From Basidiobolus meristosporus CBS 931.73 (Eukaryota; Fungi; Basidiobolomycota): a DNA stretch of 64,000 nt. Where the stretch lies: NCBI GenBank assembly GCA_002104905.1, contig MCFE01000054.1:1-64000 (forward strand). Direction: 5' to 3'. Made by a program: the position numbers and the translations under genes. This document shows positions 25,071 through 35,264 of this stretch, piece by piece; positions within the stretch are counted from its first letter, which is position 1; every line of letters begins with the position of its first letter. The notes beneath the pieces were generated by a model. That model saw only the letters and a program-made list of their open reading frames with translations, was not told the DNA's origin and searched no databases.

Positions 25071-28000
25071 TCATAATTTGAGTGCCAATCTTTTTTGCGG
25101 ATATTTCCGTCTGACATACTCCCGGACAGGACCCAATACAACAACCACTTGCCAAAGAATTCCGGCGATCATGTTGGCAATGCTAAGTCCCCAGAGTTTC
25201 CATCTGAAGTCTGTCGGATATACGTTGTGTCCCTGAGGCAGACTGTAAGGCTCAATATACCAGCTTGGGTAGCCATATCCCAACTCCTCCAAGACCTCTG
25301 CTGTACCGCAATTCAAGCGTAGCAAGCAGCCCAGCCGATTTGGGTCTGCCAATTCCGAGTACATGACTATCACCAGAAATCCCACCCAGAGGATAAGTAG
25401 CCTCCAGTTTTTCCACCAAACTGCGCGGTATTTGTGACCAAAGTTGAAGACCATCGCCGCGTTGACAAATTGATATAGAGACACAAATGAGGCAGTTTCC
25501 GACTCGTAATTATCTCCCAGTAGCCACCATTTAGAGTAGTCGACAATGCTGGAATCGAATTCGTTACAACGGTACCACGGTTGTTGTCTAAGGAAAATGA
25601 AGGCGCCGATGAAGAACAAATGATTGATCACGATCTGGCCAAGGACGGAGGCTAACGTTTCAGGACCCAGGATACGGGCGGTAGGACGAGTAACTGCCAG
25701 CCTTGGCGCTGCCCATGATTGTGTAACAGCCCAGGCAAGCCCAACGGTCACAAATGCATCGATAAGAATCCAAACATTCTGGGACGGTTGCATGGAGTAG
25801 TAAAATGTGAATATCTTGACCCAAGCCATAGTTTGGCCGTACATGATCAAATATTTATAGCCCGCGAATGAGGTAGCCAAGGCTGCTCGGCCTTGCTTCA
25901 GGAGTTCGACACATGACATTATTGAACGTGTACTGCTGCTAAATGGAGATACGATGGAGGCTTCAGCTTCACTCAGAGCAAGGCCGACATGGGAAGCACG
26001 GAGAGCTCCACAGTCATTACCACCATCACCGCACATAGCGGTGACTCCTCGTTCCATATGAAGCTGAACACATTCGACCTTGTCATTTGGCTTCATTCTG
26101 GCAAATACACGAATATCCAGCAGGTACTTACGGATGGAGTCATCCTCCACCATATGGTTAAATGCCTTATTGGTAACCGCTAGCTCTAACGGCTGCTCAT
26201 GCCTGTTCTCTTCCGCTAGCTCGATACTCGTAGCCTCCCCAGTGTCCACATCCGTCCAAACAAGCCCTGCTTTAGAGACGTCTCCGAGAAGCACTCGATT
26301 GTTGGCTGGAATCATTCCACATTGTCTGGCAATATAAATACCAGTCAAAGCGGTGTCACCAGTGACCATGACTGTTCGTGTTCCTCCTTCCTTTAATTGT
26401 GTGATGGCATCGGTGGTATCGTCCTTTAACATGTTCTTGAATAGGACAAGCCCCATCAGGTTCAGTTGGCTCTCCATTTCCTCACGGGACCATTCCTGTA
26501 TCGATCGTGGATCGATCTTGCCAAGATCTCGATGCGCCATAGCCAATACATAGCAGCCCTCCATGGCAAGCTTATTGCACATGTCATCATATTCTAGAGG
26601 AATCAGAGCTGGATCGCATAGGTCTTTCACTTTTTCGAAAGACCCTTTTACGTAGACGTGTACATGTCCGGTCATTGTATCAAGGATAGCAACCGACATA
26701 GAGGCGCGGGCATGGACAAATTCATACCGTTTCACCACATGTATGGGTGGGTTGTTTGGCTCTTCGGTCGGGGTCAGGGTGTCCAAATAATTTCCATCTG
26801 CATGTGGAGCAAGTTGCCACTTTGTTGCGCGGAACATCTCGATATCGACCGGGTTTCCAATCAATTGATCCTTGACTTTGGTCACAGTATGGCATGTAGC
26901 TACTCCAAGGCGAATGATACGCGGAATATCGGAAAAAACATCCCTCCTCTCAGTAAACTCGGGGGTGGCTCTCTCCTGAGCTTTGCTCGGATAATCATCA
27001 TTGTATGTATTGATGGGCTGTACACCGTAGAACTCTAACCCTTCCTTTGTCAAGGTGCCTGTCTTATCAAAGCAGAAGATGCGAATCTTGCCAGCGATGA
27101 TGATCCTTGGAAGGTCAACACAGAATATCTTAAGTTTGCGTAGGCGGTTCGCCGCCACACTCTGACCGACGACCAATGCTGCGGGGAGTAGGGGAGAAAT
27201 AATCTGCGAGATGGTGAACATTCCATAGAACCAAGCAGCAATATCCCCACGTCCTCCCAGCCATAGTGCAACTCCAAAGCAAATCAAGCCGTACAAAAGA
27301 AGAACGCACATCACCACCCGTAGCTGTTCATCAAAAACGAATACAATGGGATTTGGGAACAAGATCTTTCGAACCAGCTTGCCCTTGTCGGTAGAGGTGT
27401 TTGTGCGTAACACAAGAGCTGTCGCCTTCTGTTGTGACTCTTGACCGACCGGGGCCGCTTGGGAAATGGTAGTTCCCGCATATAGAGTGTTGTTTTTTCC
27501 CGATCCGGCTGGATCATATTCGATGTTATCATCGTTGAGGGGGAACTTTCGGATCGGTAGAGGCTCTCCGGTCAGCGAGCTCTCATCAGCAACAATGTTT
27601 CCGCTAATGACGGCTCCATCACAAGGCACAGCCATGTCTCTAGTAACTTCGAAGACATCCCCCGGGACCAGCTCAGCAGTGGATAATTCGGTCCATTTAC
27701 CATCACGAAGGACTAGGCAGTCACTTCGGTGCTCAGCCATTTTTTTCACTCGGTGCTCGGAGGTAAGTCTTGTGAATACACGGATCAGAGAGGAAATTAA
27801 AATAACTCCAGTGTCCACTAGACCAATATAGTAGTAGTTATAGTAGTAAAACAGCCAGAGGATCATGAATTGGTAGAGATAGAAGAATGAGGTGAACTCT
27901 TGTAATAGCGCCACTGGGAACGAAGGAACCTTGACACTAATAAAGTTGCTTCCGACCAACTCTTTTCTTCTTATAGCTTCTTCCTGTGTCAATCCGTGCG

Positions 28001-29327
28001 ACTCCTGAATAAGGTCGTGATTGTTTCGACCAACTTCGATTTGAAATGGCTTGTAATCCTGTATTTCGTCGTCGAAAACGTAACGGGTGCATTGGAACTC
28101 GAAGTACCGTCTACCCAAGGTGGTGTTTTGCACAGGGCATGTGGTGACATGGTAATCCCACCCGAATAGATGCTTGAGCTTGTTTTCAAGTCCTCGAACG
28201 ACGGATAAGAGACGGCTCTTATCGTCGAGAAGAAGGTTTGTTTTCAACTGACGCTCAAATTGGATATAGTTGGATTTGTTCGGGCGGCCCTGGATGCGGA
28301 AATAATTCCGGATTCGAGCTCGGAGTATGTTAACCCCAAGTAACCAGGCAGCAGCAAAGTACCATACGGACACAAACACCACCGAAGAAAGAGTTCCGTC
28401 CAACTTGGTAAGGCCAAACGGAGCCCCGGTGATGGTGCCATAATAGTCTCCTGTAAGCACACCTAACCACACAAACCAGCCTATAACCATGAGCACGACA
28501 GACCAAAATGCGATGGTTCCGTAGAGGTTGTTGTTATACCCCTTGATGATGAAATCGCTGTCTTGCTCCTCATCAACTTCGACTTGTTCCTTCTTGGCCT
28601 TCTCACCATGTTCTTCTTTCTCCACGATTCGGTTGTTCTTTTCAGCTTCTTTCTGACGAATGATGGTTTCTCTCCGGATGAACCTCTCAGCGAATGTTTT
28701 GTATAGATGCCAAGTCACCAACAGGAACACCTCTATGCTCAAGATGGTCCACACCCCGATCCACATGGGTTCAGTGTATGTGAATTGCTGAACCTGAGTG
28801 GATTTAGGGCACGTAAGCCATATTTGGCTACCTGTAATGCCCTGGGAAACAAGAGGAATGTTGCTAAGACCCAAGTTACTAGCGCACGCTTCACCGGTCT
28901 GTGCGCCTACTCTTCTTGGGTCAAATTGAGGGATATCCACCCATTGGCCGTTTTTACAGGGATAGTACTGTTGGCTAAGCTGTATACCGGGACAAACACA
29001 TTTGCTAACTGCACCCGAACAGCTGGATTTACAAGAACCATCCTGACAATAACTCTGACCCTCAGGGCATGTGGGCCGAATTGATTGGGGACACTGGTTG
29101 ATGTCAGTCACACAAAGAATAGGGCACATAGCATGCTTTCTTGTTCCAAGTGGACAAATATTTCCGCTGGAATTCTTCTCATTGACTAGTAGCAGGAATT
29201 TAGCATTTGGATCGTCACCAGTGCAGAGAGCAGAATTCTACTTACTTGGAATCAGTGGCACCGAGAAGACGTGCAACACAGAGACGAGGATTAGGAAAGA
29301 ACGAGCTCCATGTATGAGATTCAACAT
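25071..29327 (-). CDS. P5-type (P5B-like) ATPase with N-terminal signal peptide and Cys-rich extracellular domain, 2 exons
   Basis: DKTGTLT phosphorylation site, ESSLTGE, VYVKGSFE, MVTGD, VFARMKPNDK, MCGDGGNDCGAL. Exon 1 (29327-29246; MLNLIHGARSFLILVSVLHVFSVPLIP) splices through a 60-nt GTAAGT...CTAG intron in frame to exon 2 (29185-25071). Confidence 0.92.
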
Positions 29328-32419: not shown

Positions 32420-33457
32420 CTATTGTAACAAGACCAAACCGATTAAAGCTGCCAGGACACTGCTGGCGTTGACTACAGCTGACGAGACACCTGTGTTGCT
32501 GGTGCTACCGTTCGACTTGACACCACTGGCATTGAGTGTGGAGTTGGTTTGCTGGCCAGGGATCAAAACCCCGTCCAGGATATGGACGACTCCGTTGCTA
32601 GTGAGCAGGTTGGTGGAGACTAGCTTCATTCCATTGACCGTGACATTCCCCCCGCTCACCTGGACACTCAGCGTGGCTCCTTGAAGGGTGGTCAGCTTTT
32701 CGCCGTCGTTGAGGTCGGCGGAGTACTTGATTCCCGGGCTGACCACATGGTACTTGAGAATATCCACCAAGGCGGTGGTGTTGAGGAGCCCTGCATTCGC
32801 TTTCGCTAGGGCCTCATTGGTGGGGGCGAAGATGGTTGCCCCCTTCAGCCCGTCGATCGTCTCCACAAGATTCGCCTTGCTCAGTAGGTCTACGAGGGTG
32901 GTCAGGTTGGCACTGGCAACTGCGAGACTGGGCTTGGCAGGGGCCGTGAGTACTTGGTCGATGATATGAATCACCCCGTTGGAGGAGGACAGGTCAGCCT
33001 GGATCACCTTGGCGCTCTTCGTCCCGTAGGTGACCATCACCTCCCCTCCATCCTTGCTGAGGCCCACCACCTGGGGTTTGCCATCAGGAAGGTTCACCAG
33101 CTCCGTGCTGTTCAATAGGGTTTCCTTGAACTGAAGGGGCTTGGGCTTCAGCTCCGTGGACAAAATCTTCCCCGAGATGACATGGTACATCAGCAGATCC
33201 TGCACGAGTGTGGGATTCGAAGCATCAATCTGGGCAGCGGCGAATGCAGCATCGCTTGGAGCGAGCACCGTGAATGGGCCATTCCCAGATAGAAGGCTTT
33301 TGAGCACACCGAAGGCGGGATTGTTCATGATGGTAGCAAGGGTGGAGAGACTGGTATTCTCGGCAGCATTCTCGGCCAAGGATTTCTGGGCATCTTGAGC
33401 GATAACACATGAGATGACGAAGAGAGAGGCTACAGGGAAGAATGATTGCACTTTCAT
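32420..33457 (-). CDS. Secreted two-domain fasciclin (FAS1) protein, copy 1, probable GPI tail
   Basis: Signal peptide MKVQSFFPVASLFVISCVIA; two FAS1 domains (FTVLAPSDAAF...LLMYHVI...NGVIHIIDQVL; ATIFAPTNEAL...ILKYHVV...NGVVHILDGVL); Ser/Thr/Asn-rich linker; hydrophobic tail VLAALIGLVLLQ*. Confidence 0.93.
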   Translation of the reverse strand: MKVQSFFPVASLFVISCVIAQDAQKSLAENAAENTSLSTLATIMNNPAFGVLKSLLSGNGPFTVLAPSDAAFAAAQIDASNPTLVQDLLMYHVISGKILSTELKPKPLQFKETLLNSTELVNLPDGKPQVVGLSKDGGEVMVTYGTKSAKVIQADLSSSNGVIHIIDQVLTAPAKPSLAVASANLTTLVDLLSKANLVETIDGLKGATIFAPTNEALAKANAGLLNTTALVDILKYHVVSPGIKYSADLNDGEKLTTLQGATLSVQVSGGNVTVNGMKLVSTNLLTSNGVVHILDGVLIPGQQTNSTLNASGVKSNGSTSNTGVSSAVVNASSVLAALIGLVLLQ

Positions 33458-34226: not shown

Positions 34227-35264
34227 ATGAAAGTGCAATCATTCTTCCCTGTAGCCTCTCTCTTCGTCATCTCATGTGTTATCGCTCAAGATGCCCAGAA
34301 ATCCTTGGCCGAGAATGCTGCCGAGAATACCAGTCTCTCCACCCTTGCTACCATCATGAACAATCCCGCCTTCGGTGTGCTCAAAAGCCTTCTATCTGGG
34401 AATGGCCCATTCACGGTGCTCGCTCCAAGCGATGCTGCATTCGCCGCTGCCCAGATTGATGCTTCGAATCCCACACTTGTGCAAGATCTGCTGATGTACC
34501 ATGTCATCTCGGGGAAGATTTTGTCCACGGAGCTGAAGCCCAAGCCCCTTCAGTTCAAGGAAACCCTATTGAACAGCACGGAGCTGGTGAACCTTCCTGA
34601 TGGCAAACCCCAGGTGGTGGGCCTCAGCAAGGATGGAGGGGAGGTGATGGTCACCTATGGGACGAAGAGCGCCAAGGTGATCCAGGCTGACCTGTCCTCC
34701 TCCAACGGGGTGATTCATATCATCGACCAAGTACTCACGGCCCCTGCCAAGCCCAGTCTCGCAGTTGCCAGTGCCAACCTGACCACCCTCGTAGACCTAC
34801 TGAGCAAGGCGAATCTTGTGGAGACGATCGACGGGCTGAAGGGGGCAACCATCTTCGCCCCCACCAATGAGGCCCTAGCGAAAGCGAATGCAGGGCTCCT
34901 CAACACCACCGCCTTGGTGGATATTCTCAAGTACCATGTGGTCAGCCCGGGAATCAAGTACTCCGCCGACCTCAACGACGGCGAAAAGCTGACCACCCTT
35001 CAAGGAGCCACGCTGAGTGTCCAGGTGAGCGGGGGGAATGTCACGGTCAATGGAATGAAGCTAGTCTCTACCAACCTGCTCACTAGCAACGGAGTCGTCC
35101 ATATCCTGGACGGGGTTTTGATCCCTGGCCAGCAAACCAACTCCACACTCAATGCCAGTGGTGTCAAGCCGAACGGTAGCACCAGCAACACAGGTGTCTC
35201 GTCAGCTGTAGTCAATGCCAGCAGTATCCTGATGGTTTTGATTGCATCAGAGCTGTTGTACTAA
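34227..35264 (+). CDS. Secreted two-domain fasciclin (FAS1) protein, copy 2
   Basis: Same as copy 1 except one S/P substitution and a different tail, ILMVLIASELLY*. Confidence 0.93.
   Translation: MKVQSFFPVASLFVISCVIAQDAQKSLAENAAENTSLSTLATIMNNPAFGVLKSLLSGNGPFTVLAPSDAAFAAAQIDASNPTLVQDLLMYHVISGKILSTELKPKPLQFKETLLNSTELVNLPDGKPQVVGLSKDGGEVMVTYGTKSAKVIQADLSSSNGVIHIIDQVLTAPAKPSLAVASANLTTLVDLLSKANLVETIDGLKGATIFAPTNEALAKANAGLLNTTALVDILKYHVVSPGIKYSADLNDGEKLTTLQGATLSVQVSGGNVTVNGMKLVSTNLLTSNGVVHILDGVLIPGQQTNSTLNASGVKPNGSTSNTGVSSAVVNASSILMVLIASELLY

What the first reader, a model, noticed from the sequence alone, without database searches (positions are those of the whole stretch)
28700..29327. P5-type ATPase carrying a signal peptide and a 13-Cys extracellular domain
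Seen: an upstream exon missed by the ORF track encodes a hydrophobic leader (MLNLIHGARSFLILVSVLHVFSVPLIP). It is followed by about 135 aa with 13 Cys (ICP...MCPILC...QCP...TCPEGQSYCQDGSCKSSC...KCVC...PCK...AC...TCP), then a TM helix, a charged loop and further TM segments before the normal P5 core. Known: characterised P5A (Spf1/ATP13A1) and P5B (Ypk9/ATP13A2-5) pumps have no signal peptide or disulfide-rich ectodomain. Inference: a receptor-like or substrate-capturing luminal/extracellular module fused to a P5 pump, in an apparently uncharacterised subfamily.
Basis: partly seen in the sequence, partly recalled or inferred. Interest (0 to 1): 0.75.

Follow-up and report, generated by a model that had tools for sequence, protein, structure and literature searches.

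The report
P5 pump with built-in luminal cap
This Basidiobolus gene encodes an ATP-driven P5 membrane pump that starts with a secretion signal, a 13-cysteine outward-facing domain of no known fold and an extra membrane helix; the layout marks a whole third branch of P5 pumps found from early fungi to diatoms and apicomplexans, and I found no paper that describes it.

Summary
A minus-strand gene has exon 1 at 29327-29246, a 60-nt GTAAGT...TAG intron, and exon 2 at 29185-25071. It gives exactly the deposited 1398-aa Basidiobolus meristosporus protein K493DRAFT_334519.

Exon 1 is a signal peptide. It is followed by a 13-Cys domain, an extra TM helix with a strong positive-inside bias, a charged linker, two more helices and a complete P5 ATPase core.

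All 13 Cys, the leader and the intron position are conserved in over 100 homologues. These come from early-diverging fungi, an ichthyosporean, a diatom and two apicomplexans. They share an xPLLPA motif in M4 (not PPALP or PPELP), lack three of the four acidic spermine ligands of ATP13A2, and carry conserved Cys in luminal loops L7/8 and L9/10.

In a quick ML tree they form one clade apart from P5A and P5B. This is probably the "P5C" clade named in 2025 (TgFLP12), but I could not test that directly.

The ectodomain models confidently (pLDDT 93.5) and matches no solved fold.

I read it as a built-in, beta-subunit-like luminal cap; that function is inferred, not shown.

The scan had already noted the same layout on a paralogue elsewhere in this genome (s1-227571).

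The parts
29246..29327 (-). Exon 1: start codon plus 27 codons and 1 nt. It encodes the signal peptide: n-region with Arg9, a 14-residue hydrophobic core, and a likely cleavage site after V-F-S.
   Evidence: Homologous leaders with V/T-x-A|TP type sites occur in 78 of 106 members. The same exon is present but unannotated in the paralogue, at L001:1377-1455.
29186..29245 (-). Intron 1: 60 nt, phase 1, GTAAGT donor, TGCTAA branch-like site, TAG acceptor.
   Evidence: Donor, branch site, acceptor and phase are conserved in the paralogue's 64-nt intron. Many deposited homologue models start exactly at this boundary.
25071..29185 (-). Exon 2: 2 nt plus 1370 codons plus the stop codon. It encodes the rest of the 1398-aa protein.
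28770..29185 (-). Cys-rich luminal/extracellular domain (exon-2 residues 1-138): 13 conserved Cys and one N-x-S sequon.
   Evidence: AF2 gives pLDDT 93.5 and pTM 0.83. Foldseek finds no match (best E 3.7) and the best VIA Z is 2.0. Pfam and the Atlas give nothing.
28689..28769 (-). Extra transmembrane helix TMa (exon-2 residues 139-165), running outside to inside.
   Evidence: Family-wide, K+R averages 4.7 in the 15 residues after TMa against 0.75 before it.
28527..28688 (-). Charged cytosolic helix and linker (residues 166-219). This is the least conserved part, at 21% mean identity.
28326..28526 (-). Helices TMb and TMc (residues 220-248 and 263-286), joined by the invariant GDYYGT loop. By position they correspond to the N-terminal membrane hairpin of P5 pumps.
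   Evidence: The alignment to ATP13A2 starts only at residue 358.
25326..28124 (-). P5 ATPase core (exon-2 residues 354-1286), with TGEP, DKTGT, KGSFE, MVTGD and GDGGND motifs.
   Evidence: TIGR01657 scores 643.7 bits against a cut-off of 618.25. PDB matches: ATP13A2 394 bits, Ct P5B 359 bits, P5A 256-262 bits.
27177..27197 (-). M4 signature S-P-L-L-P-A-A, standing where P5B has PPALP and P5A has PP[D/E]LP.
25566..25568 (-). Cys in the luminal loop L7/8 (P0001 C1234), inside a clade-specific insertion.
   Evidence: 98% conserved in the family. Present in all xPLLP clade members that have the ectodomain, and absent in P5A and P5B.
25188..25349 (-). Long luminal loop L9/10 with two conserved Cys (P0001 C1314 and C1320) and a GHNV-P-FRW motif. 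Mean family identity is 59%.

Best explanation
**Shown**
- This is a real, intact two-exon gene for a P5-type P-type ATPase.
- Its first exon encodes a signal peptide.
- The next ~138 residues form a compact 13-Cys domain.
- An extra helix (TMa) follows, then a charged cytosolic linker, two helices and a complete catalytic core.
- The layout is conserved, together with an xPLLPA M4 motif and Cys-bearing insertions in loops L7/8 and L9/10, across a clade distinct from P5A and P5B.

**Inferred topology.** The leader takes the N-terminus into the ER lumen. The Cys-rich domain folds there with disulfides and N-glycans. TMa then returns the chain to the cytosol, so the pump core keeps the normal orientation.

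**Inferred mechanism.** The ectodomain acts as a built-in luminal cap, much as the separate beta subunit does for Na,K-ATPase or Cdc50 for P4 flippases.
- It packs on loops L7/8 and L9/10. The 13 + 3 luminal Cys would allow eight disulfides, one possibly linking the cap to L7/8.
- It is needed for folding and ER exit, and/or it shapes the luminal mouth of the transport path.

**Inferred substrate.** The pocket has lost three of the four acidic spermine ligands of ATP13A2 and is aromatic. The substrate is therefore probably not a polyamine but something less cationic, possibly lipid-like, as proposed for TgFLP12.
For: **Gene model**
- define it, and it is identical to K493DRAFT_334519.
- The signal-peptide exon and intron phase are conserved in the paralogue.

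**Signal peptide and topology**
- 78 of 106 homologues have a hydrophobic leader, and the rest are truncated models.
- 98 of 106 have at least one N-glycosylation sequon in the domain.
- K+R averages 4.7 after TMa against 0.75 before it.
- AF2 of residues 1-350 gives pLDDT 92 with three long helices.

**Conservation of the luminal Cys**
- The 13 ectodomain Cys and the three loop Cys are conserved.
- The loop Cys are present in fungal, ichthyosporean, diatom and apicomplexan members.
- They are absent in the P5A and P5B rows and in the one clade member that lacks the ectodomain.
- L9/10 is 59% identical across the family, as high as the core.

**Clade**
- The xPLLP rows form one group at SH-aLRT 99.
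- An AU test rejects grouping the fungal family with an animal P5B (p = 0.0039).

**Substrate pocket**
- D254 is replaced by Y, D463 by F and D960 by Q; D967 is kept.
- The ligand residues are those listed in PMC8564547.
Against: - No signal-peptide or topology predictor could be run, and there are no RNA or protein data.
- No model coordinates were available, so disulfide pairing is unknown.
- Contact between the ectodomain and the loops is untested: the 1398-aa protein exceeds the 1200-residue folding limit, and no shorter natural homologue has both ends.
- The co-absence of ectodomain and loop Cys rests on one row on a long branch.
- The tree has only five P5B rows, one P5A row and long branches, and it used the quick search.
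- The AU grouping was chosen after the tree had been seen.
- The substrate inference rests on sequence alignment alone.
Confidence: 0.6

Rival explanations
1. The ectodomain is a receptor-like or substrate-capturing module that binds the cargo, or a signal, on the luminal/extracellular side and hands it to the pump. It is not mainly a structural cap.
For: - P5B pumps take substrate from the luminal side (PMC8564547).
- TgFLP12 is proposed to move fatty acid out of a compartment (PMC12217143).
- The domain is well conserved (38% mean identity) and confidently folded.
Against: - It has no similarity to any binding domain.
- The conserved loop Cys and insertions suggest docking on the pump.
- The two roles are not mutually exclusive.
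Confidence: 0.25
2. The leader is an uncleaved signal anchor, or is not a targeting signal at all, and the Cys-rich segment is a cytosolic metal-binding domain such as a zinc cluster.
For: Cys-rich cytosolic N-terminal metal-binding domains exist in P1B ATPases (general knowledge). No predictor was run here.
Against: - The positive-inside bias after TMa is strong.
- The leaders have a classic n/h/c layout with small residues at -3 and -1.
- N-glycosylation sequons occur in 98 of 106 members.
- An N-in topology would invert the pump core unless TMb and TMc do not span the membrane.
- The conserved columns hold no His or other zinc-finger pattern.
Confidence: 0.06
3. This is a gene-model artefact. 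Exon 1 is not joined to the ORF, and translation starts at the internal Met (29129), giving a truncated N-terminus.
For: The ORF track starts at 29129.
Against: - Coding conservation continues upstream of that Met, covering Cys1 and the N-x-x-x-x-G motif.
- The splice signals are canonical and the phase is conserved in the paralogue.
- The deposited model is identical.
- The leaders are conserved from fungi to apicomplexans.
Confidence: 0.03

Closest known systems
P5B ATPases (human ATP13A2, yeast/Chaetomium Ypk9)
   Same: These are the best solved-structure matches (394 and 359 bits). The gene passes the P5 model TIGR01657. It shares the ten-helix core and catalytic motifs, keeps the M6 Asp (D967 equivalent) and the two aromatic ligands, and has an N-terminal membrane hairpin at the same position.
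   Different: - M4 reads SPLLPAA, not PPALP.
- Three of the four acidic spermine ligands are lost.
- There is no PF12409 hit.
- It has a signal peptide, a 13-Cys ectodomain and an extra TM helix.
- L7/8 and L9/10 carry Cys-bearing insertions.
- It falls in a separate clade.
P5C ATPases (TgFLP12 / PF3D7_0504000; Nat Commun 2025, PMC12217143)
   Same: [quoted passage not shown] That range matches the clade found here: early-diverging fungi, Nitzschia, Rhytidocystis and Selenidium. For PfATPase3, AlphaFold gave two N-terminal TM helices plus a further membrane-crossing helix, which the author dismissed as hallucinated (PMC12655044). That fits TMa, TMb and TMc.
   Different: Membership could not be tested because the reference sequences were not retrievable. 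The paper reports no N-terminal targeting sequence for TgFLP12 and does not mention a Cys-rich luminal domain. PfATPase1 is said to keep the ATP13A2 ligand residues, unlike this clade.
P5A ATPases (Spf1 / ATP13A1)
   Same: They share the P5 core and have two extra N-terminal TM helices (Palmgren 2023), comparable to TMb and TMc.
   Different: Sequence scores are lower (256-262 bits). M4 reads PP[D/E]LPxE. They have no signal peptide or ectodomain. The single P5A row lies outside the clade.
Na,K-ATPase beta subunit and Cdc50 (accessory subunits of P2C and P4 pumps)
   Same: This is a resemblance in how it may work only. Both are disulfide-bonded, glycosylated ectodomains anchored by TM helix or helices that sit on the pump's exoplasmic loops (L7/8 for the beta subunit) and are needed for maturation (general knowledge).
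   Different: Here the module is part of the same polypeptide, at the N-terminus and behind a signal peptide. There is no sequence or fold similarity.

Membership tests
P-type ATPase superfamily | DKTGT phosphorylation motif, TGE-type A-domain motif, TGD and GDGxND hinge motifs | tested here: met
   TGEP at 566, DKTGT at 734, MVTGD at 967 and GDGGND at 1080 of P0001. PF00122 matches at E = 2.8e-25.
P5 ATPases (TIGR01657, P-ATPase-V) | Score above the curated cut-off of the family model | tested here: met
   643.7 bits against a cut-off of 618.25, covering residues 354-1286 of exon 2.
P5B | PPALP motif in M4 (Palmgren 2023, PMC10654040) | tested here: not met
   The motif is SPLLPAA here and xP[LIV][LI]PAx in every homologue that has the N-terminal module.
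P5B | Acidic polyamine ligands D254, D463, D960 and D967 of ATP13A2 (PMC8564547) | tested here: not met
   The equivalents are Y, F, Q and D here. In 126 members the counts are 114, 118, 97 and 124 respectively.
P5B | Groups with PPALP-bearing P5B in a tree | tested here: not met
   The xPLLP rows form their own group at SH-aLRT 99. Holding the fungal family together with an animal P5B is rejected (p-AU 0.0039). Only five P5B rows were available and the quick search was used.
P5A | PP[D/E]LPxE motif in M4 | tested here: not met
P5A | Two extra N-terminal TM helices | tested here: inconclusive
   Two helices, TMb and TMc, are present. Their homology to Ma and Mb was not established.
P5C (PMC12217143) | Clusters with TgFLP12 (TGGT1_289070) and PF3D7_0504000 in a P5 phylogeny | not testable with these tools
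   The reference sequences could not be fetched. Two apicomplexan proteins do fall in the clade.
P5C (PMC12217143) | Taxon range: other fungi, diatoms and alveolates, but not animals, yeasts or flowering plants | tested here: inconclusive
   The range seen here fits. A matching range is not a test of homology.
Na,K-ATPase beta subunit / Cdc50 | Sequence or fold similarity of the ectodomain | tested here: not met
   No Pfam hit. Foldseek's best E is 3.7. The best VIA Z is 2.0 over 48,161 chains.

The most novel reading that the evidence does not exclude
A third, roughly LECA-age branch of P5 pumps is defined by an N-out topology that is very unusual for P-type ATPases. A cleaved signal peptide is followed by a new disulfide-knotted fold that serves as a covalently attached, built-in counterpart of the beta/Cdc50 accessory subunits. 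This cap is disulfide-linked to loop L7/8 and gates the luminal entrance for a non-polyamine, possibly lipid-like, substrate.
Probability: 0.3. Interest if true: 0.8.

Novelty: new variant of a known kind. Interest (0 to 1): 0.7.

Why it matters
- **Topology.** As far as I know, P-type ATPases have both ends in the cytosol, and any exoplasmic partner is a separate subunit. A pump family with its own signal peptide and a conserved disulfide-rich luminal domain would be a new architectural solution.
- **Clade marker.** The module gives a simple sequence marker for the third P5 clade: leader, 13 Cys, xPLLPA, and the loop Cys.
- **Annotation.** It explains why many deposited gene models are truncated: a tiny first exon has been missed.
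- **Experiments.** It suggests testable ideas on substrate access for a clade whose only studied member, TgFLP12, matters for apicomplexan parasites.
- **Model organisms.** Mucor, Rhizopus and Phycomyces carry several copies and can be manipulated genetically.

Tried and rejected
- **Family scans.** Pfam and NCBIfam on the N-terminal 158 and 350 residues gave only a chance-level DUF2207_C hit (E = 0.058).
- **ESM Atlas.** The ectodomain's best score was 0.77, which is not informative. The Rhytidocystis protein returned only generic P-type clusters.
- **Fold searches.** The 350-residue model returned only generic helical bundles for residues 133-308. I therefore folded and searched the ectodomain alone.
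- **Folding both ends in one chain.** I looked for a natural homologue of 1200 residues or fewer that keeps both the ectodomain and the C-terminal loops. None exists among 397 fetched proteins.
- **Core search.** The first core search filled its 120 rows with family members and gave no P5A or P5B rows. These came only from the search with the divergent member P0254.
- **Literature.** Searches for a P5 pump with a signal peptide, a cysteine-rich or luminal domain, or in Mucorales or Basidiobolus found nothing relevant.
- **Other protein contexts.** The idea that the domain also occurs in other proteins is rejected for now. Every hit of the 350-residue search that reaches a DKTGT motif has the xPLLPA motif. 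The short hits look like N-terminal fragments.

Full report
**1. Gene model**

The gene lies on the minus strand.
- The ORF list shows a 1352-aa ORF at 25071-29129. Its frame stays open upstream to a stop inside the intron, with no further ATG.
- Upstream, an ATG at 29327 opens 27 codons for a hydrophobic leader. These end at a GTAAGT donor at 29245.
- The 60-nt intron has a GCTAAA branch-like site and a TAG acceptor at 29186. The split codon A|TC encodes Ile.
- Exon 1, the Ile and exon 2 are identical, residue for residue, to the 1398-aa protein K493DRAFT_334519 of Basidiobolus meristosporus CBS 931.73, fetched as P0001.

I did not hand a joined exon1+exon2 sequence to any tool. Exon 2 and its parts were searched by window reference. 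Exon 1 is too short to search. The identical database protein was used by its id.

Independent support for the splice comes from the paralogue K493DRAFT_384971.
- Its locus L001 has an unannotated leader exon at 1377-1455 and a 64-nt intron in the same phase.
- Donor, TGCTAA branch site and acceptor are all conserved.
- The deposited paralogue model instead starts at an ATG inside that intron.

**2. Is the N-terminal module real and more than chance?**

- The 138 residues after the leader hold 13 Cys, against 20 in the other 1232 residues (binomial tail 4.9e-7).
- In an alignment of 126 full-length homologues, each of the 13 Cys is conserved wherever the region is present. Of 106 members, 103 have exactly 13.
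- 78 of 106 members start with a hydrophobic leader of classic n/h/c layout, often ending V/T-x-A before a conserved T-P-x-[WF]-N-x-V-N motif.
- Most of the others are partial or truncated models that begin at or near the exon-2 boundary, which points to a small first exon that is often missed.
- K+R averages 4.7 in the 15 residues after the first TM helix against 0.75 before it. 98 of 106 members have at least one N-glycosylation sequon in the domain.
- AlphaFold2 on residues 1-350 of exon 2 (61-sequence alignment) gives mean pLDDT 92. It shows a compact N-terminal domain, a long helix (139-165), a second helix (167-195), a strand, and two further long helices (220-248 and 263-286).

Together these features place the Cys-rich domain on the luminal/extracellular side. 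With one or three membrane crossings before the core, the pump keeps its normal orientation.

**3. The pump core**

- NCBIfam TIGR01657 (P-ATPase-V) scores 643.7 bits against a cut-off of 618.25.
- Among solved structures the best matches are ATP13A2 (394 bits) and the Chaetomium P5B (359 bits), ahead of P5A (256-262 bits).
- All catalytic motifs are intact.
- M4 reads S-P-L-L-P-A-A, where P5B has PPALP and P5A has PP[D/E]LPxE.
- The ATP13A2 spermine ligands are listed in PMC8564547. The alignments give these equivalents:

| ATP13A2 ligand | Residue here | Members with this residue (of 126) |
|---|---|---|
| W251 | W | 112 |
| D254 | Y | 114 |
| D463 | F | 118 |
| D960 | Q | 97 |
| F963 | W | 121 |
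| D967 | D | 124 |

These substitutions hold across the family. The pocket is therefore aromatic and keeps only one of the four acidic ligands.

**4. Distribution**

- A core search returned only family members of about 1400 aa in its 120 listed rows. They come from Mucoromycota and Zoopagomycota, all unnamed, with at least four paralogues in this genome.
- An exhaustive search with the N-terminal 350 residues found 138 representatives. Every one that reaches DKTGT has the xP[LIV][LI]PAx motif.
- Named distant members come from Chytridiomycota, Blastocladiomycota and the ichthyosporean Amoebidium.
- A search with the most divergent member added the diatom Nitzschia and the apicomplexans Rhytidocystis and Selenidium. 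It also supplied P5B (PPALP) and P5A (PPELP) rows.
- Nitzschia has a leader followed by the same CP-x-[IL]-C-V ... D-C-P ... C-x-D-G-x-C-x-x-S-C pattern (ectodomain HMM E = 1.7e-3 at Z = 1e6).
- The full Rhytidocystis isoform has a leader, the P-A-F-H-T-A-N-D-Y-D-L-D-G-N motif, 14 Cys, a TM helix and a basic stretch.

**5. Phylogeny**

- In a quick ML tree (44 rows, 1335 columns, LG+C20 PMSF), all 34 xPLLP rows form one group at SH-aLRT 99. They lie apart from five P5B rows, one P5A row and four bacterial P2 outgroups.
- An AU test rejects holding the opisthokont family together with an animal P5B (delta lnL 41.5, p = 0.0039). That grouping was named after the tree had been seen.
- Sampling of P5A and P5B is thin, and several branches are long.

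**6. Luminal loops**

- Three further Cys are 97-98% conserved: C1234 in L7/8, and C1314 and C1320 in L9/10.
- They sit in insertions that P5A and P5B rows lack. They are present in fungal, ichthyosporean, diatom and apicomplexan members.
- The only clade member without them is a long-branch protein in Zophobas morio records, which also lacks the ectodomain. This is a single case.
- L9/10 is 59% identical across the family, as high as the core average of 56%. The ectodomain is 38% identical and the cytosolic linker 21%.
- Thirteen plus three luminal Cys make an even sixteen. This is the basis for my inference that the ectodomain docks on these loops and may be tethered to them.

**7. Fold**

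- Folded alone with 67 sequences, the ectodomain reaches pLDDT 93.5 and pTM 0.83, with little regular secondary structure.
- Foldseek against the PDB gives nothing below E = 3.7.
- The exhaustive VIA search of 48,161 chains gives one match, at Z = 2.0.
- Pfam and the Atlas give nothing.
- A missing match does not prove a new fold, but no known domain type can be assigned.

**8. Comparison with the literature**

- Reviews list only P5A and P5B (PMC10654040). ATP13A1 is reported to have 12 TM helices and ATP13A2-5 to have 10 (PMC5837089).
- A 2025 paper names a third clade, P5C. Its range (other fungi, mosses, diatoms, oomycetes, alveolates) fits the clade found here. It proposes that TgFLP12 exports fatty acid from the apicoplast (PMC12217143).
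- That paper mentions neither a Cys-rich domain nor a signal peptide, and reports no N-terminal targeting sequence for TgFLP12.
- A modelling paper notes an N-terminal extension in PfATPase3. It dismisses as 'hallucinated' an extra membrane-crossing helix plus two TM helices that AlphaFold predicted there (PMC12655044). This is what the layout described here would predict.
- I could not fetch TgFLP12 or PfATPase3, so P5C membership remains probable (about two in three) but untested.

**9. Verdict**

- The module is not a recent fusion. It is the conserved hallmark of an old third P5 clade.
- Its role is inferred. I favour a built-in, beta-subunit-like luminal cap that may also shape substrate access.
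- A follow-up agent of this scan reached a similar description for a paralogue on another piece of this genome (s1-227571).
- New here are the apicomplexan members, the link to P5C, the loop Cys, the pocket changes and the tree.

Noticed in passing
L001:1377-1519 (paralogue K493DRAFT_384971, GCA_002104905.1 MCFE01000052.1): The deposited model starts at an ATG inside the intron (L001:1501), giving an artefactual M-I-L-L-F-I-V start. The real signal-peptide exon (1377-1455) and a 64-nt intron lie just upstream, unannotated.
   Followed up: yes
Family alignment of 106 members: About a quarter of deposited homologue models lack the leader, and most of these begin at or near the exon-2 boundary (V-N...). 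The tiny first exon seems to be missed systematically by gene callers in early-diverging fungi.
   Followed up: partly
P0274 / P0396 (Zophobas morio records XP_063932470, KAJ3616736): A beetle genome record holds an xPLLP-type P5 pump (M4 T-P-L-L-P-V-A) on a long branch. It lacks both the Cys-rich N-terminus and the loop Cys. It could be a contaminant (for example a gut parasite), a transfer, or a rare animal member.
   Followed up: no
window 32420-33457 (-) and 34227-35264 (+): Two almost identical 345-aa ORFs with N-terminal leaders lie in inverted orientation about 770 bp apart and differ only near their C-termini.
   Followed up: no
PMC12655044, section 3.10 (literature): AlphaFold models of Plasmodium ATPase3 showed two N-terminal TM helices plus a further membrane-crossing helix, which the author judged wrong. 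This may be the true remnant of the TMa/TMb/TMc arrangement seen here.
   Followed up: partly
window 25188-25349 (-), luminal loop L9/10: This ~50-residue exoplasmic loop (A-D-P-N ... C-x-x-R-x-N-C-G ... G-H-N-V-x-P-x-x-F-R-W) is as conserved as the catalytic core (59% against 56% mean identity). That is unusual for an exoplasmic loop of a P-type ATPase.
   Followed up: partly
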